Shown here: one piece after another, positions 1 to 22,564 of the stretch
Numbering within the stretch: position 1 is the first letter of the stretch
Layout: every line of letters begins with the position of its first letter
From: Girardia tigrina
Lineage: Eukaryota
Direction of reading: 5' to 3'
Length of the DNA stretch: 62,052 bases
NCBI GenBank assembly: GCA_001938485.1
Contig: MQRK01182049.1
Coordinates: 24,808 to 86,859, forward strand
Program-made: the position numbers and the translations under genes
The notes under the pieces: generated by a model
What the model saw: only the letters and a program-made list of their open reading frames with translations
Told to the model about the DNA's origin: nothing
Databases searched by the model: none

Positions 1-1127
1 AAATAGTTGGTCGAAAATCTCCCCCAGTACGATTCCCGATAAACATCCAAAAACTGCTCCGAGTAGTCCGCTCATTAGGACAATCATCAGTTGATAAATC
101 GGTATACCCAATGACCCAGCGAGAGATTCTTTAAACATTTCATCGAATATTCCACAGAAAACGCCTCCAAATATCGCTCCATGAGTACCACTAATTACCC
201 CACCAAAAATACCCGCACAAAAACTACAAAACACATTTCCACCGTCTCTATTTATAATTCCATTTATCACTCCGCTGATCATTCCGCCAAATATTCCGCT
301 CCCTATCCCCCATAACACAGCGTTCGACAAATTACTCAATAAATTCACAAAAAATTGGTTCAAGACTTTTCTATAAATGTATGCAAATATCATAGGTGTC
401 ACATAGACAAATATCTTCCAGGGGAAAATCGAAAACAAAGATGTATACTGTTGCGCAAAACCTCCAGAAGTAATGAGTCCGAAATATTCACTAAAATTTG
501 AGAGAGCGCTATTTCCGCAAATACCACTCACTATTCCGCCTAGTATTCCACAGATCATACTTTTCGTCATTCCACCGTGTATACCCACAAATCCACCAAA
601 CATAGCACCTCCTACAATCCCGATTTCACTCAAATTAAACAGTCCACGCGACAGTGCCCCTTCCAATCGATGTAACACCAGGCCCACAAATCCGTAAACG
701 ATTAGCATTAATATTAAGTCTGTGTATCCGTACAGTTTTCCACCATATATTACATCGAAAATCCCCCTCACAACTCCACACACTGATCCAGCCGAAACTC
801 CCAACAGTGATCCCCATAGACCCCCTACAACGAACCCAAGCATTGCCCCAAAAAAGCTGTATATGACTACTCCGTAAACCAAATTCAAAAATCCGGACGG
901 CAGAAACTCCAACCACATTTTATGTTCTTGATTCAATAATACAAACACTTCACTATTTTCAATTGACTTGAAATTCTTTCGTTTTTGAAACAAATTCCCG
1001 ATGTCCCACTTTATAGATCCTATTGGTTCCATTTGATCTAAAACATATTTGTTTCCCAAGGACGATTTGTATGGAAAATGTGATCTTCCTTTGTCGCTAT
1101 TATTACCGTAACCAGAGAAGCTCGAGC
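1..1127 (-). CDS. Long exon, incomplete at the window edge, of a TRAF-like protein: N-terminal half of a MATH domain followed by about 300 aa of glycine-zipper multi-transmembrane repeats
   Basis: I translated it manually and found no stop codon from 1127 to position 1. Acceptor ttattaaccacAG ends at 1128 (phase 1). It reads ...GSIKWDIGNLFQKRKNFKSIENSEVFVLLNQEHKMWLEFLPSG (MATH beta1-beta3-like), then FLNLVYGVVIYSFFGAMLGFVVGGLWGSLLGVSAGSVCG...GIVGGAMFGGFVGIHGG...GIGSGIFGGMISGVING...GIFGGVISGTHGAIFGGVFCGIF. It is probably missing from the ORF track because it runs off the window. Confidence 0.85.
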
Positions 1128-1174
1128 CTGTGGTTAATAAATATGTTTTAATGTAATTAATTTTTTTATAGTAC

Positions 1175-1385
1175 TTTTTGTGCTTGAAATATTTTTCATT
1201 TGATTCGTAATGTTTTTCAGTTCTTTTTTTAATTCTTCGATTTCTTTTCCGTGTTTGCGACAATCGCTCTTTAATATAGGCACATCTGTTTCGTATAATT
1301 GTCGCGTTTCTGTCAGAGATTTATTCGTTTCGATGATTTTGCCATCGAATTCTTTTAAATTTGATTCCAGCTGATCTATTCTCTT
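1175..1385 (-). CDS. Internal coiled-coil exon of the same gene
   Basis: Acceptor tttcAG (ends 1386) and donor GTAC (1174). The 47-nt intron 1174-1128 joins in frame (A|GC = Ser). Reads KRIDQLESNLKEFDGKIIETNKSLTETRQLYETDVPILKSDCRKHGKEIEELKKELKNITNQMKNISSTK with a heptad pattern. Upstream exons not identified. Confidence 0.8.
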
Positions 1386-1449
1386 CTGAAATTAGAGATA
1401 CATTTATTCCAAGAGACTAATACCGTAAAAGATTTTAATGAATAAAAAA

Positions 1450-1658
1450 GATATATACATAGAGAAGCTGGCCTACTCATTCGACTCAAGGAACTACTAG
1501 AGCTACCGACGCGAAAAAACTTTAGTAATTTAGAAGAGACGAGAAACAATTTTCCGCAGTATTTAGAGTCAATATCGAAGATCAAGCTCATAGGAGAGTT
1601 TCAAAAGTTCACAAGTCGCCTCTAGAGTATACTTGCAGCTGATGGAGACTATGTTTAG
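1450..1658 (+). mobile_element. Degenerate Tc1/mariner transposase C-terminal remnant
   Basis: Ends ...SRL*SILAADGDYV*, typical of Tc1/mariner C-termini; otherwise broken. Confidence 0.35.
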
Positions 1659-1701
1659 ACTTTGTTATCCTTTGCTAACACCTTTAGTATAACTGCACAT
1701 G

Positions 1702-2032
1702 TAAGGTGACCAGATTTTTAGATGGACAAAGTGGGACAACTCCGAAGGAGGGGACATTCAACAAAATTTTCATACAGAATAAAAATAATATAGTAATATT
1801 TTTTTTATTTTTAACACAAGTACAATTTATAATTATAAAAAAATATGTAATATTTTATTCCTTGATATATTTTAAATCTGAGAATATGCTAGTCGTCGTA
1901 GCCCGTAGAATTCTTAGAACGCAAAACAATGATTTTCATAAATATAAAATTTAACTTAATTATAAAAGTCAGGACTTTTGAAAAACGTCGCGGGACGCAG
2001 GACAAATTGTGAAAAAGCTTCTGGTCACCTTA
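1702..2032. mobile_element. Non-autonomous hAT (Blackjack-like) MITE
   Basis: Perfect 13-bp TIRs TAAGGTGACCAGA...TCTGGTCACCTTA, flanked by a perfect 8-bp TSD TGCACATG (1694-1701 and 2033-2040); subterminal GGGAC motifs. Confidence 0.9.
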
Positions 2033-4441
2033 TGCACATGTGATTTTCCTAAATTAATATTTTAAATTGTATTTTTTTAAGGTTTGGACAAGATTTCATC
2101 GACATAGAAAATTAATTTTTTCGCCGATTTCTATATTTAGTTTTAATTTTAAATTTAACATATTGTGTTCTATATTGCAGACATCTTTAAAATTTGTGTT
2201 GTGTATTCTTTATTATTATGACATACATATTAGTTTTTCAATATGCTTTTTATACGAACACTGAATCACCTGAACAAAAAAATATGTAAAAATATGACTA
2301 GTGAGGATATTTGAAAGAAAAATAGGACAATTATTCCTATTTTGATGAAGAATTAAAGTGCAACTTCAACGAAAGACGTGATAAGAATTATGGATCAAAA
2401 TATCATTTCAATTAACAGTGTTGTCCCTTACTATTTTGATTCTATTTGGAGTAAGGAAGAAGACTCATCATTGAAATAAAAGGAATAGAAAATTATTTAA
2501 CGTTTAATTTGTATTTTTAAAGAATGAAAGCGATTTATTTACGGTTACTTATCATGCGTTAGTTTTTACCCACGGTTATCTGAAAAATGACACGAATAAA
2601 TTGGTTTCGTACTGTTTTTTTCGATTGAACTTCTTATGCCAATAGATGAGTCTAATGTAATATTTTTTTCCATTTAACTTGTATTAGTTAAAATGAAACG
2701 CATAAATAAGAAACAAACTAAGCATACGAAACAAAGAAAAGTATATGGATTATTTTGTTTTAAAAGTATAACCCCGCCCTAATTTATTAACCCTTTCAGA
2801 ACCTGCTTATTTTGAGTAAGAATTAACGATTTGTCAAAATAATTTTTCGATTTTTCATTTGATTGAGCATGTAGAAAAGGGTTGAAGAACTAAGAAATCC
2901 TACTCAACCTGAGCTTATTTCTTTATTAAAATCAAGAAAATTATAACACCTAAAATAATTAATTTATTAATTATTATTTGAACTTATGAATGTCTGTAAG
3001 TGAGATGAAGAAGCATGTTATAACACAGAAGAGTAAAATAAAGTCACAAGAGCAACTAAAAGGACACATTAAAAATGTACGGTGGAAAACGTACTTGCAT
3101 CAAAGAGAACAACCACAAAGGAGAAAAAATGAATGTTGGTCGATAACCGAAAAGGAGTCACTCACACTAGAACAGAAATGTTGATCGCCGGAAAACCTAA
3201 CAGATAAATGGATATCCAGCTATCCTTTTTCTCAATCCACTAACAGTGTTACTACAGGCAAGGCTCAACAAAATTACGAAACTAGGTATCATGATAGATC
3301 ATTCTCTAGAGGTTAGCCAAAGCCTGCACGTCCACTGAAAGCTCTCACTCCAACATCTGTAGTATGTGAGGATCGAAATACTCATATTTTATGGGTTCTA
3401 AACTCTTATAATCAGCGATTGGATACCGGTGTATCAGGGTAAATTAAGCTGCTTTCCGCAAGTCGGATACATTTATCACTCGTGTGCATTTCATTTTCAT
3501 TTCGCTGATCAATATTTAAATATTTTAATTTTAACACGTTCCATGTCTCAAACAAAAAGCAAAATGGAGCCACAAATTCAATAGCTTTTTTCGAAAATAT
3601 TGTTTTTATGTTGTCAGAAGAAAACAAAACTAAACAATAAAAAATAAAAAGTAATCCAGAAGTAGGTATTTTTACGCTACTACACATGAAGCTCAAGAGC
3701 GTAGAGTGTTTTTAATCCTGCACATTCATTATTCTGAGCCGTATGGGTTTCAGCGAACATGTAACGTGTTAAAAATATTTACAATTAGATTTTGTAGATA
3801 TTTTGAATTAAATTTTAAAATTAAATTAATTCAAATAAATTAAATATTAAATAAAACGTTTTTAATCAAAAATATTAAAATTCAATATGATATTTGACGT
3901 ATTAAAATTAGGTATTAATGTTCAGTGTTTGTATAAGGATATTTGAAGTTAAATATTATTAAAATTAAATATGATTTTTGAAGGAATTGTAGTTTAAGTT
4001 AACCAAGTTTAAAAATTTAATAACTTAAAATTATGATCGAAATAGTTAGTTTTTATTGTAAATTTACTAGAATATTTTAGGATAAATAAGATTATTTATA
4101 TAATAGAATTTAGCGAAATGATTACTAGTCAAAGAAAATAGGCGTAAATTTGTTAAATATACAAAGATATAAATTGTGCTATTTATGAATTGAAATATTG
4201 ATAAAACTGAAAACTTGAATGGCATCATAATAAATCATCATTGGTCATTAAAATCGCATTTTTTCCGTTAAGAGTTAAAAAAATAAGTTGTTTAATGTTC
4301 ATTTCATTATTCTTATTCCTCATTTGGATTGTAATTCAAACAAATTTTAACTTCCTATTTGTTAGGGGTTCTTTTTGGTGAACTATAAATTTTTGATATT
4401 TTTAAATTGAAAATCGTATTTATATTTGAGATAAATTAAAA

Positions 4442-4713
4442 ATAATGTTCTACTAATTAAAATGAAATAACTTATTATAAAATAAAATTTAAGTTTATAG
4501 ATAATATTTTTACTAATTAAAATGAAATAAGGTTTCATAAAAAATTATGGTTTATAGGTAATATTTTTACTAATTAAACTGAAATAACATTTTATAAAAA
4601 TTATAGTTCACAGATAGTATTTTACTAATTAAAATGAAATAAATTTTTATAAAAAAATATAATGTAATGATAATATTTTACTAATTAAATTGGAACAACT
4701 TTTTATAAAATTT
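4442..4713. repeat. AT-rich minisatellite, about 5 copies of a ~57-bp unit
   Basis: Recurrent core TAATATTTTTACTAATTAAAATGAAATAA. A separate 2-copy ~93-bp duplication follows at about 4803-4955. Confidence 0.8.
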
Positions 4714-5659
4714 TGGATTTAAAAAAATCACAATTAGAATAACAGCTTAGGAGTTAAAGAATATTGTAAAGAAGATTTTGATATATCTTGTAACACTATT
4801 TACAAATCATAATGCTTATTGAATTAAATTGTCAACGGAAAAGATTTATTAAAAAATAATTTATTAAATATTTTTAAAATCAAGTTCTAAAATAAAAATC
4901 ATTATGCTTATTGAATTTAACTGTCAACGGAAAGTCTTATTAAAAAATAATTAATACTTGAATGATTTAAAATTAAAGAAAAAAAATTTAGGAATTGAAT
5001 TTTTACAGAAACATGTCCATTAAAATATATATAGATCTAAATTTATGTTTCAATTAATAAATATTGTAAAACATAATAAAACAAAAACAAAATATGATTT
5101 ATGCAACATTGAATAAAATAACACACGCACACACTCACCCACCCACCCNNNNNNNNNNNNNNNNNNNNNNNNNNNNNNNNNNNNNNNNNNNNNNNNNNNN
5201 NNNNNNNNNNNTATATATATATATATATATATATATACATCGATATTATTATTTATATTTAGAATTTTAAAATCTGATTTATGTAATTGAAATATTGTTC
5301 CTCATAAATTTGTTTGAATAATGAAAGTTGTACTAGAAATAAAGTTTTGTGTTAATGACGTCTTTTGATAAAGAACCCAATACTTTTATTAGATTATTAA
5401 GTATGAAATTTGTAGGCATGATTACAATAAATTTAAATAGTTATATTTTTCTTTGACTTAACCTTGTTGTTACTCAGCTTTTATTTAATTTCTACATATT
5501 TTGGCTATTGATCCCATCCATAAAAATTACTTTAAATAATTGATAACTTATTTTAATAATCAGTATTTAAAAAATGGAAAAGTTAGAGATTCAAACGTGG
5601 AGTCTCAGCATCTGAAACCATGCGAAACATCCAAAGTCTATTCGAATACAATGCTAATA

Positions 5660-5900
5660 CGTACCGGAGAGTCTCAAATCGGTTCTGGAAATTCGTGAAA
5701 GGTAAATTTAACCTCAATAATGAATCTTAGAGTCGCCCAGAAACGCAGATAGACAATGAAAAACTGAAGATAACCGTGGCGTCGGTTCTACTACAAAATT
5801 TTTATGATTTATCGCTAACATTTTCTGTTATAAAGCAAACAATATAGAATTACTAGACTCGAAATTGGTACAGTGTAAAATTTGAATAGGTGGATGTAGT
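5660..5900 (+). mobile_element. Mariner transposase N-terminal (HTH) remnant
   Basis: Reads NRFWKFVKGKFNLNNES*SRPETQIDNEKLKITV, matching the mariner WFxKFRxGxFxLxDxxRxGRP motif. A similar copy lies at about 27260-27620. Confidence 0.6.
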
Positions 5901-6265
5901 GCTCACTAAATCTTATCAGCAACAGCAACCAATTAAGAGTTTTTCTAGGTTACATTTAGTTTAATTTTTGATTTTACAATTATTTAAAATGTCTTAACTG
6001 GATTTGCGATCCTTGAAATTTTTGAACTGGAAAAATCCAGATTTACATTAAAAAATAATAAAAAGAAAAGTAATTTTGTTTTTCCGGGCTACGACATTAA
6101 TTGGCAGTTTTTTTATTTGAAATAAAGTTTCGATATTTAGTGTTGTTTTAATAATCAACATATTTTGGAATTTTGAATCGATACACCATTATTATAACGT
6201 AATATGACTACTATGAACGAATTTTAACGAATTTCTGTTCCATTGAAATTTAAAGATAATATCGA

Positions 6266-6757
6266 TTATCTTCTCATATCAGAAAATCCTCCGATAATTT
6301 CATGCAAAAATCGCCGACTGAATTTCGATCCTAGAACCCCCAAATTTAAGTGGGACAAGCGATATTTGATTAATTCAGTCTCGAAATTGCTGACATGAGA
6401 CTTTATGAAATGCACGTTTTTGAATTTGGATTCGAGTACCGATGTTATAAATGCCCTCAAAGAAAATCGATTCGTGTGTCCGACGAATATTCGAATTAGC
6501 ACAATCCCAACAATTCTCATTGGACTGAATACGATTTTGGGCGGCGAAACCGGTGGCGGTAAAATCTGTGACATGATATACGCAGCCAGTCTGAGGCCTG
6601 GAGACAGTCTCGTTGCGTTCATGCCGAGAATGAATTCTCTCGGCAGTGTCCCCATCGATACGCACTTCGTTTGTACAAGATCAGTGACCCTGGTCACCTC
6701 AGTGGATTCCACATGAGTTGTGTTGGGATCGTTGTTGAGTTCATAAAATTTTTGAAG
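6266..6757 (-). other. GC-richer coding-like island of unknown identity
   Basis: An open stretch of about 160 codons on the minus strand, with overlapping ORFs on both strands, inside much more AT-rich flanks. No recognisable domain, and strand and frame are uncertain. Confidence 0.3.
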
Positions 6758-7554
6758 TTACAATCTTATCGAATTAATAATTAAACAATTACATTCCGTA
6801 AAATATTGTTATAGATATGTTAAAATAAGATTTTCAGAAATTTAATGTAAAAAATTAATTCATGTAAGAAATAAAATAAATTTTACGGTAGGTTTATTAA
6901 AAGATTTATTATAAAGTAAAAAAGTTAATTTCAAATTTGATGAAAATATTTAAGTGAAATAAAATCAAAAGTAATATAAAGTTTAATATTTTATTTGAGA
7001 AATGAAAGTAAACTAAAATATTTTTTTGTAACTTTCTTTTATTTTACACGATTAAATAGAAGTAAATTAAAATGTCACTATAATTTTATTTTTGGAAATT
7101 TTAATTGGAATCAAAATATAATTGTAAAACAATTAAATCGATTTAAATGAAACTGCAGTTTTAATTTTATTTTGGAAAACATAATTATTAATGGAAATAT
7201 AATTTTATTTTTTATGTAAAAAATGGGTAATTTAAGAAATGTTAAATTAAACAAAATTGCGATTTTAAATTCTATTTTCAAATATTATTAAATCCAAAGT
7301 AATTTTTAAATTTATTATGAAAACGAAGTGAAAAATGCTATTGTATAGAATTGGGAAATTTAATTGAGAAACAGGTAAATTTAAAGGTACAATAAAATTG
7401 AAATTTAATAAAAGACGAAACAAAATTTTTGTGACAAAATTTTAATTCACTTTATATTTTTTTATTAAAAAAAAGTATAGAATTTAATTCGAAAAAATAT
7501 AATAACCATATTTATATCAATTCTTATTTATAATGGTCTGTGTAAAAAGAAAGT

Positions 7555-7652
7555 GCAAAAGTTCCTCGGAAATATTTGTTTAAAAAAACTAAAATTGTGG
7601 TAGAAATAAAGTTTTGTGTTCATGACAAAGTTTTTTGATCAAGAACCCAATA
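7555..7652 (+). repeat. Dispersed repeat ending TTGATCAAGAACCCAA(T/C)A, possibly the 3' end of an LTR
   Basis: Related copies at about 5296-5382, 38397-38487, 51376-51501, 33850-33968 and, inverted, 55170-55350. Confidence 0.55.
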
Positions 7653-7689
7653 AGTTGAATTAAAAGCACAAACAAAAGTGTTATGATGC

Positions 7690-8285
7690 TTCCTTAATGC
7701 TCTCACGTTATAAATGTGATCATTTTTGAATTGATTCTTCACTTGTGATGAAAAGTCTATCCAATATGATAATCGAAAACTTTCAGTAAACTGAGTGGAT
7801 ACGCATGAAGCACCGAAACACATTCCAAAGCAGAATGTTTGATGGTCTGCCGCAGGTGTAATCCATTATAAATTTCTGAAACCTGGTTCGTCGATCACAG
7901 CAGATGTTTGCTGCAACCAATTGGAAGATATGATGCAAAAACTCAAAGAAAACCATCCGCATTTTATAAACAGATCGACTCTCATCCTGCTCTATGACAA
8001 TGCAAAACCACATTCTGCATTTAAGACCGTGACAGAAGTACAGGAACTTGAGTTGGAACTTCTGAATCATCCTCCATACTCAACAGACGTAGCCCCAACT
8101 CACTACCATTTCTTTCTCAATTGAAAAACTATTCGATAGGAAAAAATTTAATTCTGAAGATTCCCTAAAAACCCTTCCAGGAATTTATAGATTCTCGCCA
8201 ATTAAATTTTTATTCAAATAGCCTCAACAAGCTGCCGCTGAAATGGAAGAGTGTCGATAATACGTATGCATACTTTGATGAATGA
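7690..8285 (+). mobile_element. Decayed mariner (DD34D) transposase, catalytic half
   Basis: LILLYDNAKPH and LNHPPYSTDVAPTHYHFF motifs, ending in CVDNTYAYFDE*; contains frameshifts. Confidence 0.9.
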
Positions 8286-9945
8286 CATAAATATTTGTAT
8301 TGGTAAATTATCAATAAATTTTGGCTTTAGTTCTACAAATTTCATGCTTGAAGACAGTAATAATAATTTAATTTGACGATATTTATATTTTAAAAATTAG
8401 TTTTGAACTATTAGACGTTTAATTCTAATTCATCAAAACCCTTTTTTAATTTCAAATCAATGAAGTTATTAAACATAAAATTTAAAAGCTCAAAATTATT
8501 ATTTCCAAAAATTATATGTAATTTATTTCAATTATTTGACGAAAATTAATTTCAAAATTTAATTTATTATTTTTATTTAAATTTATTATTTAAAAATTTA
8601 AACGTCTTTTAATTTTTAAATAATTTAAATTTTGCCAGCGAAATGAAAGTTACCTAAATCCTCATAATTGATTATTACTCATTGAGAACATTCAAATTCA
8701 AATGAATTCTCAGGGGAGATAATTCGTCGATTAGCGATACGCAAGTAACACATTAATTTTGTCGAATTAATAAATCAATTAGTGCGATAATACACGATAA
8801 AACACAGCAATACAATTAATGCAACATATTAACGTCAGAAAATACATTCTCGTCCATCCGTTGACACGAGCGCAACAATTTGAAAATTGATTAATTGATT
8901 TAAGTGATTTATTTAAACAAACGATTAATTGATGAATTATTTTTATTTTCGTTTGTCGTATCAATTAATTCATATTCGATGTAATGTTTTACGGAAAACG
9001 ACAAAATATATTTATTACTAAATTGATTTTTGTTTAAAAATTATATTTATTTTTTGAATAATTAATTATTTATTTTCAAATATTAAAGTTGTGTTCTTAC
9101 TTATTAAATTGGACATAATATTTGATAATATTTTTTTTAGTTTAATGGTTTACTATGCACAAACCTTAGAGTCGAGACAACGAAAAATCGAGTAAACTAA
9201 TTATTTTAATAATTAAGGACAATGTGAAAGCCATCACAGCCGTTGTTTGTTTTTTTTGTGATCCATCTGCTGCAGTATCAAAGTGGTTCCTAAAAGCAAT
9301 TGGAAATGAAGGATTTCTTCAACCTGGGCCCTCAATGTAAGTGGTAGAAAAGTAGCTGAGGATGTCATTGTAACTATCCTCATTAGGAAGTTCTAGCATA
9401 AGTGTTCTGTAGATATCGAAAACATCATTTGTTTCTCACTCTCATGAATACATGGCACTTTTCAGAAAAATATACTTATAATTATCAGTATTATGGGAGC
9501 AAAAATTGATATTGAATATATATAAATTGCCCAATTACTCAATTGTCCCATTAGCCAATTGTTCATTACCCAATTGTCCGGTCATACGTTTTTACATATT
9601 TGTCACATTCAATGAATGTTGCACGAAAATTATTTGATTATGGACATTGGATTTTAGATTTTATTTAGTCAAAATATTTTGAATGCTTCATTCGCTAATT
9701 CTTTCTCAATTGTGCATAAGCCCAACTAAATGTATTGTTAGACAAATGTCACAGATAACCACGGAAAGATTTAAAAATACAAATTTATCTGCAATGGATT
9801 GAGCAAGATTTGAACGACTTTCACAAAAGTTATATCTATCTTAATAATATCTTACTAACATATTAGTTTACATAACTTTTTTAAATTGTATGAACTTTAA
9901 ACAAAAAATTGACAAAAAAACTTTAAAACTAATATATTGAATATA

Positions 9946-10560
9946 TTAGGTTGGTCGAAAAATAATGGCAGTTTTTGAGCTTTATACTTTGTCCATCTAC
10001 TTTGATATGTATATAAGTTTAAATGCATTAGTGTTAGATATTATTTGAAATCTAATGTCTAGCTGTATATTCCTATAGCCATTATTAACATATTGTTGTT
10101 ATTTTTTAGAATATTTACGGTGCTAAATTAATAATGGAAAAAATTAAAATTCGAGCAATTTTCTTGTACGAATTTAAACTGGGTCGTAAAGCAGCAGAAA
10201 CGGTTCGCAATATTAATAAAGCGTTTGGCAAGGAAACAGCTTCTAAGTGCACAGTGCAACGATGGTTCCGAAAATTTTCTGATGGAGATGAAAACCTTGA
10301 AGATGAAGAAGGTCGTGTTCGTCCAGTTGCTGTGAACAACGACAACTTGATGACAATGGTGGAAACAGATCCCTGTACAACAATCAGAGAACTTGCAGAT
10401 GGATTGGGCATTAGTCATTCAACAGTCCTGGATCATTTAAAACAACTTGGAAAAATCAAGAAACTTGATAAATGAGTTCCACATGATTTGAATGAAAATC
10501 AAAAGAACCGACGCTATGAAATTTGTTCTGCCAATCATCTTCGCAATAAAAACGATTTTT
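9946..10560 (+). mobile_element. 5' part of a mariner element: TIR plus transposase N-terminus with a premature stop
   Basis: TA|TTAGGTTGGTCGAAAAATAATGGC TIR. ORF 10134-10475 (IRAIFLYEFKLG...TVQRWFRKF...LKQLGKIKKLDK) stops at the W of WVPHDL. An inverted mariner C-terminal fragment follows at about 10600-10780. Confidence 0.9.
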
Positions 10561-22100: not shown

Positions 22101-22520
22101 TTACGACTGATTTGAGGCAGTTTTATTTTTGGGAGATGATGGAGCAGATCGATGTCCATATTCTCCAGAATGTTCTGGATTTGAGTTATCAGATAATATT
22201 AAGTTGGGATTAATATTCGCCCATGACTGATTCGATTTTGAGACTGTTGTGACCTTTGGTAACAGGCCAGGAATGTATGATACCCTTGACGAAGCAGTTT
22301 CATTTGGAACTGAATTAGTATGGGATAATTTACCAGTCAAAGCCGGGGAAATGTTTAGTTGATTCATCAAAGTATGGAATATTTCAGAACGTAAAAATCG
22401 TTGATATGAATCTTTTTCCATTAGAGCTTGAATCTTTTTCTGAGACTGATCAAATGTCTGTCGGGTGGCATGAATAATATCTGAGGCTGTTTGTATTCTT
22501 GTCACTGAATCAAGATTAAT
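22101..22520 (-). CDS. RGS-domain protein, last exon
   Basis: Acceptor ttcttcAG (ends 22521). Reads INLDSVTRIQT...TFDQSQKKIQALMEKDSYQRFLRSEIF (RGS C-terminal signature) to TAA at 22103-22101. AATAAA lies about 30 nt downstream. Confidence 0.93.
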   Translation of the reverse strand: MNLDSVTRIQTASDIIHATRQTFDQSQKKIQALMEKDSYQRFLRSEIFHTLMNQLNISPALTGKLSHTNSVPNETASSRVSYIPGLLPKVTTVSKSNQSWANINPNLILSDNSNPEHSGEYGHRSAPSSPKNKTASNQS

Positions 22521-22564
22521 CTGAAGAAAATGTTTTACAAAGATCTATTAATTCTCAATATAAC

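What the first reader, a model, noticed from the sequence alone, without database searches (positions are those of the whole stretch)
1..1385. TRAF-like protein whose MATH domain breaks off into about 300 aa of glycine-zipper membrane repeats
Seen: an intact spliced reading frame, absent from the ORF track, with a coiled coil, then GSIKWDIGNLFQKRK...I.NSEVF...HKMWLEFLPSG, then at least 300 aa of hydrophobic GxxxG/GxxGG tracts with no stop codon. Established: TRAF adaptors have a coiled coil followed by MATH, whose first strands read GxxIWKI...SPxFY..GYKMCLRxYxNG, and they are soluble. Glycine zippers mediate helix packing in oligomeric and pore-forming membrane proteins, and similar repeats occur C-terminal to some bacterial NACHT proteins. 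Inference: the MATH fold is truncated, or split by an insertion, at the loop after strand 3. The result would be a trimerising TRAF-derived membrane protein, a candidate innate-immune or cell-death effector with an architecture I do not recognise.
Basis: partly seen in the sequence, partly recalled or inferred. Interest (0 to 1): 0.78.

Follow-up and report, generated by a model that had tools for sequence, protein, structure and literature searches.

The report
TRAF-derived glycine-zipper membrane protein gene
A probable flatworm gene from the TRAF signalling-adaptor family keeps only its coiled coil and the first three strands of its binding domain, then runs into about 300 residues of glycine-studded membrane-type helices with no detectable relatives. 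It is spliced, expressed and conserved, but its function is unknown.

Summary
On the minus strand there is a three-exon gene:
- A tiny first exon with the ATG at 8857-8855.
- A 70-residue coiled-coil exon at 1385-1175.
- After a 47-nt GT-AG intron, an exon from 1127 to 1 that runs into a 2,707-N block.

Contigs from four runs in four studies show the 47-nt splice. They cover the MATH-to-glycine junction without a break.

Residues 32-78 of the last exon are homologous to strands 1-3 of MATH in this genome's own divergent TRAF-like paralogues (hhalign 94.9%, E 4e-8). Pfam alone sees nothing there. The following 297 residues are 19% Gly and 41% I/L/V/F. Glycines recur every 4 residues (z about 5).

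This glycine-rich part has no hit in Pfam, NCBIfam, PDB sequences or 1.84 billion representative proteins, and it is single-copy in the genome. Differences between runs give dN/dS of about 0.3. All six changes at glycine codons are silent.

There are no RING or TRAF zinc-finger exons. A trimer model of the coiled coil passes its controls.

Still open: whether MATH resumes inside the N block, the membrane topology, and any immune or cell-death role.

My reading is a lineage-specific, functional chimeric membrane protein derived from a TRAF-like gene.

The parts
8846..8901 (-). Exon 1: about 44 nt of 5' UTR plus ATG (8857-8855) and three further codons (Met-Asp-Glu-Asn). Donor GT at 8845-8844.
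   Evidence: The 55 nt just upstream of the exon-2-like part of the decayed processed copy L002 match here (82%, E 6e-9). Reading the sequence shows the ATG, the in-frame join to 1385 and a TAA 12 codons upstream. The join itself was not seen in reads, because only 1-6000 was laid.
1386..8845 (-). Intron 1 (7,460 nt, GT..AG). It holds a mariner-like transposase fragment and repeats.
   Evidence: Inferred from L002, which joins the two exons directly. The X1 contig (depth 910) stops at 1383, while only a depth-8 contig continues into 1386-1766.
1175..1385 (-). Exon 2: 70-residue helical coiled-coil region in two heptad stretches separated by a proline. It sits where the TRAF-N coiled coil would be.
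   Evidence: An open frame of 85 codons in DNA of about 27% G+C. Only weak Pfam hits, to assorted coiled-coil families. The three-copy model gives an in-register parallel bundle: score 0.80, best control 0.01, partner pLDDT 89, runs agree in at least 97% of contacts.
1128..1174 (-). Intron 2, 47 nt, GT..AG.
   Evidence: Skipped exactly in contigs of X1, X6 and X8. The X5 loose end at 1127 reads 1175-1188.
1030..1127 (-). Exon 3, first part: Ser/Gly/Asn/Lys-rich linker of about 32 residues.
   Evidence: Translation. No family hit.
892..1029 (-). Exon 3, MATH stub: strands 1-3 of a TRAF-type MATH domain, ending at the Pro-Ser-Gly loop.
   Evidence: hhalign to alignment A1 (prob 94.9%, E 4e-8, 45 columns). 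BLASTP to L011 (45% identity, E 7e-6). hmmsearch E 3.5e-7, profile positions 34-81 only. The paralogues used are true MATH domains (PF22486, E 4e-9 to 1e-5).
1..891 (-). Exon 3, glycine-zipper region: 297 visible residues in about 9-10 hydrophobic segments. It continues into the N block left of the window.
   Evidence: 19% Gly, 41% I/L/V/F, 7% charged. Glycine period of 4. No relatives found. 15 silent and 16 replacement differences between runs, an in-frame 6-nt insertion near 630, and six of six changes at Gly codons silent.

Best explanation
**Shown**
- This is a real, spliced, expressed and selectively constrained gene.
- Its product starts Met-Asp-Glu-Asn. It continues with a 70-residue coiled coil, a short linker and the first three beta-strands of a MATH domain. 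That MATH stub belongs to a divergent, lineage-specific branch of this genome's greatly expanded TRAF-like family.
- Right at the loop after strand 3 the sequence changes. At least 297 residues follow that are built from (GxxxG)n hydrophobic segments with no detectable relatives.

**Inferred**
- An ancestral single-exon coiled-coil+MATH gene lost the rest of its MATH domain to a 3' replacement by an orphan reading frame.
- The product is a multi-pass integral membrane protein with a cytosolic N-terminus. There is no signal peptide, and the head is rich in Lys and Arg.
- The coiled coil brings several chains together, probably three as in TRAFs, so that their glycine-zipper helices pack into one oligomeric membrane assembly.
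- The three-strand stub cannot fold as a MATH sandwich. It probably serves as a linker, not a receptor-binding module.

**Not known**
What the assembly does: channel, pore, scaffold or organelle anchor.
For: - **Gene model and splicing:**
- **MATH homology limited to strands 1-3:**
- **No MATH remainder:** none in any frame of the window, nor in the 7.3 kb beyond the N block.
- **Composition:** hydrophobic, glycine-periodic, with charges confined to short loops.
- **Purifying selection:** dN/dS about 0.31 and binomial p 0.0013. Replacements are conservative (L/I, V/I, M/L, Y/F). All six changes at Gly codons of the zipper region are silent. Under neutrality that has a chance of about (1/3)^6 = 0.0014, my own arithmetic.
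- **Indel:** the 6-nt indel in X6 and X8 is in frame and lies in a loop.
- **Not an assembly chimera:** independent contigs from four studies carry the same head-to-zipper junction.
- **Coiled-coil self-association:** model score 0.80, best control 0.01. The mark was reached by 21 of 30 proteins solved as pairs and by 0 of 23 solved as single chains. The calibration used two copies, not three.
- **Family context:** TRAF/MATH expansion in planarians is documented (PMC6109357). This genome has at least 150 zf-TRAF matches.
Against: - The 3' end of the reading frame is hidden in the N block. Contigs run 148-406 nt past the window edge. That is just enough for the missing 96 or so MATH residues if the 3' UTR is very short.
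- Membrane insertion rests on composition alone. No topology predictor was available, and the single-sequence AlphaFold2 model is uninformative (pLDDT 40).
- The exon 1 to exon 2 join is inferred from a decayed processed copy, not seen in reads.
- The runs are only guessed to be RNA.
- The protein libraries searched evidently lack this species' own transcripts. Absence of relatives among other flatworms is therefore untested.
- Coiled coils often score well in any oligomeric state.
Confidence: 0.6

Rival explanations
1. Split MATH. The glycine-zipper region is an insertion of 300 or more residues into the loop between strands 3 and 4. The remaining five strands, encoded inside the N block, complete a functional MATH domain held at a membrane.
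For: The break lies exactly in a surface loop. The window ends at what looks like the end of a hydrophobic segment. The X6 and X8 contigs reach 370 and 406 nt past the edge, enough for about 96 residues plus a stop.
Against: It needs two in-frame junctions instead of one, and a 3' UTR under about 115 nt. The X1 and X5 contigs end after 198 and 148 nt. No MATH remainder was found anywhere readable.
Confidence: 0.2
2. The glycine-rich tract is not a membrane domain. It would be a hydrophobic low-complexity region that self-assembles, in an amyloid-like or granule or structural way, nucleated by the coiled coil.
For: Runs of GxxxG also occur in amyloid-forming peptides (general knowledge). Several segments are only weakly hydrophobic, with a Kyte-Doolittle mean of 0.8-1.3. 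The structure model has no confidence.
Against: 41% I/L/V/F with only 7% charged residues, segment lengths of 17-30 residues, and charges clustered between segments all fit helical membrane hairpins. There is no DNA-level tandem repeat or recent expansion.
Confidence: 0.1
3. A non-functional chimeric locus. A TRAF-like pseudogene would be fused by rearrangement to unrelated sequence and merely transcribed.
For: The fusion is single-copy with no parent gene.
Against: At least 450 codons are open in DNA of about 27% G+C. Silent changes are in excess (p 0.0013), glycine codons change only silently, and the indel is in frame. Contig depths in three runs are 107-910.
Confidence: 0.05

Closest known systems
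This genome's divergent single-exon coiled-coil+MATH (TRAF-like, RING-less) paralogues: L011/L012, L006/L013 and L007-L010
   Same: A helical region directly upstream of MATH, with no RING or zinc fingers. Strands 1-3 align at 40-45% identity, sharing the Trp of strand 1, the Ser-Glu-Val-Phe of strand 2 and the Lys-x-Trp-Leu-Glu of strand 3.
   Different: The paralogues finish the MATH fold in about 96 more residues within the same exon and are about 180-190 residues long. Here the sequence switches to a glycine-zipper hydrophobic region of at least 297 residues. The coiled coil is also on a separate exon.
Canonical TRAF adaptors, of which TRAF1 is the RING-less type
   Same: The order coiled coil then TRAF-C/MATH. 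The coiled coil is predicted to form a parallel in-register bundle.
   Different: No complete MATH, no Pfam MATH hit, no RING or zf-TRAF. TRAFs are soluble, whereas this product is predicted to be membrane-embedded.
Glycine-zipper membrane proteins and toxins: Pfam Gly-zipper_Omp, Gly-zipper_YMGG, Gly-zipper_OmpA and Rick_17kDa_Anti, and the glycine-zipper ends of bacterial T7SS LXG toxins such as EsxX (PMC12744356)
   Same: Repeated GxxxG on hydrophobic helices. The longest run here has nine glycines at strict 4-residue spacing, at residues 93-125 of exon 3.
   Different: No sequence similarity to any of these families (no Pfam or NCBIfam hit at E up to 10). It is far longer, about 10 segments instead of 2. 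It is eukaryotic, intron-containing and fused to a TRAF-like head.

Membership tests
TRAF / MATH-domain proteins | A complete MATH (TRAF-C) eight-stranded beta-sandwich recognised by PF00917, PF22486 or PF21355 | tested here: not met
   No Pfam hit at E up to 10 on exon 3 or on the 78-residue head. The lineage profile matches only positions 34-81 of 185. The part hidden in the N block could not be read.
TRAF / MATH-domain proteins | Descent from a MATH-encoding gene, shown by significant homology to bona fide MATH domains | tested here: met
   hhalign prob 94.9%, E 4e-8 to paralogues that themselves hit PF22486. BLASTP E 7e-6.
TRAF / MATH-domain proteins | A coiled coil (TRAF-N) directly N-terminal of MATH that self-associates | tested here: inconclusive
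   Heptad-patterned 70-residue exon. The three-copy model scores 0.80 against a best control of 0.01. This is a model only, other stoichiometries were not tried, and there is no significant sequence homology to TRAF-N.
TRAF / MATH-domain proteins | N-terminal RING and TRAF-type zinc fingers (absent in TRAF1) | tested here: not met
   tblastn of five full TRAF reading frames from this genome against the whole window gave nothing. The start codon lies four residues before the coiled coil.
Curated glycine-zipper families (PF13488, PF13441, PF13436, PF05433 and NCBIfam equivalents) | A profile match to the family model | tested here: not met
   No hit at E up to 10 in Pfam. NCBIfam gives only chance-level rows.
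Glycine-zipper membrane helices (a motif class, not a family) | (G/A/S)xxxGxxxG runs on hydrophobic segments of transmembrane length | tested here: met
   16 overlapping GxxxGxxxG strings. Spacings 4, 8 and 12 are enriched at z 5.1-5.5. Hydrophobic segments are shown.
Glycine-zipper membrane helices (a motif class, not a family) | Actual membrane insertion | not testable with these tools
   No topology predictor or experiment was available. The AlphaFold2 single-sequence model has pLDDT 40.
Any known transporter or channel family | End-to-end or domain-level profile or sequence match | tested here: not met
   Pfam, NCBIfam, PDB sequences, the word search and the exhaustive phmmer run all gave nothing. 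The exhaustive run returned only four low-complexity repeat proteins.

The most novel reading that the evidence does not exclude
A TRAF-family gene has been turned into an oligomeric, probably trimeric, glycine-zipper pore or channel. A coiled coil inherited from an immune adaptor would assemble an orphan membrane-permeabilising domain. That would give planarians a lineage-specific executioner or ion-conducting effector of innate immunity or cell death, unrelated to gasdermins, MLKL or NINJ1.
Probability: 0.12. Interest if true: 0.8.

Novelty: new variant of a known kind. Interest (0 to 1): 0.5.

Why it matters
Planarians carry one of the largest TRAF/MATH expansions known, and almost none of these genes has a function assigned. 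This member shows that the family has produced more than adaptor duplicates. It has produced a conserved, well-expressed chimera in which the receptor-binding domain is replaced by an orphan multi-pass glycine-zipper region.

If the product is an oligomeric membrane assembly, it offers three things:
- A tractable example of how a new membrane protein is born from a soluble signalling scaffold.
- A candidate for a new class of channel or pore.
- A direct RNAi target for asking what the expanded family does in regeneration or immunity.

If it proves to be only a structural oddity, it remains a clean case of domain loss and gain under selection.

Tried and rejected
**Steps that gave nothing**
- *Leftward extension:* 2,707 N lie directly left of the window. 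The letters of run contigs beyond the edge were not retrieved.
- *Pfam on exon 3 and on the head:* no MATH and nothing else.
- *Word search of 5.8 billion proteins:* none.
- *Exhaustive phmmer on 1.84 billion representatives:* four hits at E 2e-6 to 4e-4. All are translated simple repeats of the 'ILSGIYSD' type, so I rejected them as composition artefacts.
- *ESM Atlas, twice:* scores of 0.80 or no usable hit, which is noise.
- *NCBIfam and PDB sequences:* nothing meaningful.
- *Own-genome searches with exon 3 and with the zipper alone:* only the locus itself.
- *AlphaFold2 without an alignment:* pLDDT 40, so no fold search was run.
- *DNA tandem or direct repeats in the zipper region:* none of note, so a recent microsatellite-type origin is rejected.
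- *Internal protein repeats:* only weak, z 3-4.5.

**Ideas considered and dropped**
- *Spliced-leader trans-splicing supplying the AUG at 1385.* Flatworm leaders end in AUG (PMC12582326). I set this aside once L002 revealed a conventional first exon with its own ATG. It is not excluded as a minor form.
- *Assembly chimera.* Rejected, because four independent assemblies carry the junction.

The joined, spliced protein was never submitted to any tool.

Full report
**Sequence and gene model**

One frame is open for 375 codons from 1125 to base 1. A second frame is open over 1391-1137. The two are joined in phase by removing 1174-1128, which has GT and AG at its ends.

The window is G000:C182049:24808-86859. 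The 2,707 bases to its left are all N, so the frame runs into a gap or mask. I did not fill it.

The genome is 1.43 Gb in 255,254 contigs and the window has about 27% G+C. Other agents' notes call it a freshwater planarian. I did not test that myself.

**Transcripts**

I laid the contigs of four public runs from four studies on 1-6000.
- X1 (contig depth 910), X6 (140) and X8 (107) each hold one contig that covers 1-1126/1128, skips exactly 47 nt and continues in the coiled-coil exon.
- The X5 contig ending at 1127 has a 14-letter loose end that reads 1175-1188.
- No other joint lies inside 1-1126. The MATH-like head and the glycine-rich tract are therefore one exon in mature RNA.
- Because four independent assemblies agree, an assembly chimera is excluded.

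The runs are only guessed to be RNA. However, the assembly holds no processed copy spanning this junction, so a spliced RNA is the simple reading. The contigs run 148, 198, 370 and 406 nt beyond the window edge. The reading frame plus 3' UTR therefore ends within about 400 nt.

**The 5' end**

The coiled-coil exon has no in-frame ATG before its last ten codons. In unspliced RNA a stop lies three codons upstream of 1385.

Contig C251308 (L002) holds a copy that is 81% identical and full of stops. It aligns from exactly 1385 onward and not with the sequence upstream of 1385. Its 55 nt immediately upstream instead match window 8901-8847 on the minus strand (82%, E 6e-9).

Reading the sequence there gives:
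- ATG at 8857-8855, followed by three codons.
- GT at 8845-8844.
- An in-frame TAA twelve codons upstream of the ATG.

Joined to 1385, the frame reads Met-Asp-Glu-Asn-Lys-Arg-Ile-Asp and onward. L002 is thus a decayed processed copy that preserves the exon 1 to exon 2 junction. In X1 the depth-910 contig stops at 1383 and only a depth-8 contig continues into the intron, which fits this model. The junction itself was not seen in reads.

Full TRAF reading frames from this genome (RING + zf-TRAF + coiled coil + MATH, intronless, 300-470 residues) find nothing else in the window. The gene therefore has no RING or zinc fingers.

**The MATH claim**

Pfam finds no MATH in exon 3 or in its first 78 residues. 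A search of the genome with those 78 residues picked up weak matches (E 0.3-2) to single-exon open frames of 180-191 residues. These frames are true, divergent MATH domains preceded by helical regions (PF22486, E 4e-9 to 1e-5).

Three tests used those paralogues plus two canonical ones (alignment A1):
- The A1 profile matches residues 32-78 at hhalign probability 94.9%, E 4e-8, over 45 columns.
- BLASTP against L011 gives 45% identity, E 7e-6.
- An HMM of A1, run over all six-frame pieces of the window and of the 7.3 kb beyond the N block, hits only this segment. The match covers profile positions 34-81 of 185, at E 3.5e-7.

The aligned part spans strand 1 (the Trp), strand 2 (Ser-Glu-Val-Phe) and strand 3 (Lys-Met-Trp-Leu-Glu). 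It ends at the Pro-Ser-Gly loop, where the paralogues have Pro-Asn-Gly or Cys-Gly-Gly.

**The glycine-rich region**

Composition and pattern:
- The 297 visible residues are 19% Gly, 41% Ile/Leu/Val/Phe and 7% charged.
- They form about 9-10 hydrophobic segments, with the charges between them.
- Glycine pairs are enriched at spacings 4, 8 and 12 (25, 24 and 25 observed against about 10.5 expected, z 5.1-5.5). They are depleted at 2, 6 and 10.
- One run has nine glycines at strict 4-residue spacing.

There is no tandem or direct DNA repeat of note. Internal protein similarity is weak.

Searches for relatives all came back empty:
- Pfam, NCBIfam and PDB sequences.
- The word search.
- The ESM Atlas.
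- The exhaustive phmmer run over 1.84 billion representatives, which gave only four simple-repeat artefacts.

The region is single-copy in the genome. One caution applies. These libraries did not return even this gene's own product from the run assemblies, so they say little about other flatworms.

**Selection**

The contigs differ from the window at 31 listed sites in exon 3. Of these, 15 are silent and 16 are replacements, over 253 silent and 872 replacement sites. That gives dN/dS of about 0.31, with a binomial p of 0.0013 for the silent excess.
- Replacements are conservative.
- All six changes at glycine codons of the zipper region are silent.
- One replacement creates a further glycine.
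- X6 and X8 share a 6-nt in-frame insertion near 630, in a loop.
- No change is listed for the 138 nt of the MATH stub.

The gene is therefore under purifying selection, and the glycines in particular are maintained.

**Oligomerisation**

Three copies of the 70-residue exon were modelled.
- The score is 0.80 against a best control of 0.01.
- Partner pLDDT is 89, and the runs agree in at least 97% of contacts.
- The contacts are in register at heptad positions.
- The mark was reached by 21 of 30 proteins solved as pairs and by 0 of 23 solved as single chains. The calibration used two copies, so the counts hold only roughly here.

This supports self-association but does not fix a trimer. Coiled coils can pass from general likeness to solved structures.

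**Interpretation**

The best-supported reading is a lineage-specific chimera. A RING-less coiled-coil+MATH gene of the expanded family lost MATH strands 4-8. TRAF/MATH expansion in planarians is documented in PMC6109357 and PMC7586133, and this genome has at least 150 zf-TRAF matches. The gene now ends in an orphan, multi-pass glycine-zipper region. The product is probably an oligomeric integral membrane protein with a cytosolic coiled coil.

The main rival is a MATH domain split by an insertion and completed inside the N block. Length alone cannot exclude it, but it requires a very short 3' UTR and a second in-frame junction.

A non-membrane self-assembling tract and a transcribed pseudogene are both less likely, for the reasons given under the rival explanations.

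A role in immunity or cell death is conjecture. Glycine-zipper ends of bacterial toxins depolarise membranes (PMC12744356), but there is no homology to them here.

**Limits**
- The N block was not filled.
- The joined spliced protein was not submitted to any tool. Exons were searched separately by reference.
- Only one read-laying run was available, so exon 1 was not covered by reads.

Noticed in passing
L002 (G000:C251308, about 8970-9181; locus coordinates about 1446-1660): A decayed processed copy of this gene's mRNA, 81-82% identical with several stops. It preserves the exon 1 to exon 2 junction but breaks off inside exon 2, so it does not show whether the parent already carried the glycine-zipper exon.
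   Followed up: partly
window 7843-8121 (+) and 10110-10472 (+): Mariner-type transposase fragments. The first lies inside the 7.5-kb intron 1 and matches a transposase frame in L017 (tblastn E 7e-12). The second has the N-terminal helix-turn-helix look of a mariner transposase, judged by eye only.
   Followed up: partly
L007, L008, L009, L010 (four short contigs) and the pairs L011/L012 and L006/L013: Identical or nearly identical 180-191-residue coiled-coil+MATH open frames on separate short contigs. They are either very recent duplicates or redundant or haplotype contigs in the assembly.
   Followed up: no
L022-L025 and L017: Canonical TRAF genes of this genome are single uninterrupted open frames of 300-470 residues (RING, zf-TRAF, coiled coil, MATH). 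At least 150 zf-TRAF matches exceed the Pfam cut-off, out of 610 first-look candidates.
   Followed up: partly
window 4200-6000: Very high summed contig depth and many discordant joints in all three larger runs. This indicates expressed repeat families inside intron 1.
   Followed up: no
window 22104-22544 (-): An open frame of 147 residues whose sequence looks like part of an RGS domain by eye. It was not tested with any profile.
   Followed up: no
window 1386-1628 (-): The X6 contig runs unspliced from exon 2 up to 1628. This is either an intron-retaining or pre-mRNA form, or an alternative start. In that form the first in-frame ATG is ten codons before the end of exon 2, so the product would lack the coiled coil.
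   Followed up: no
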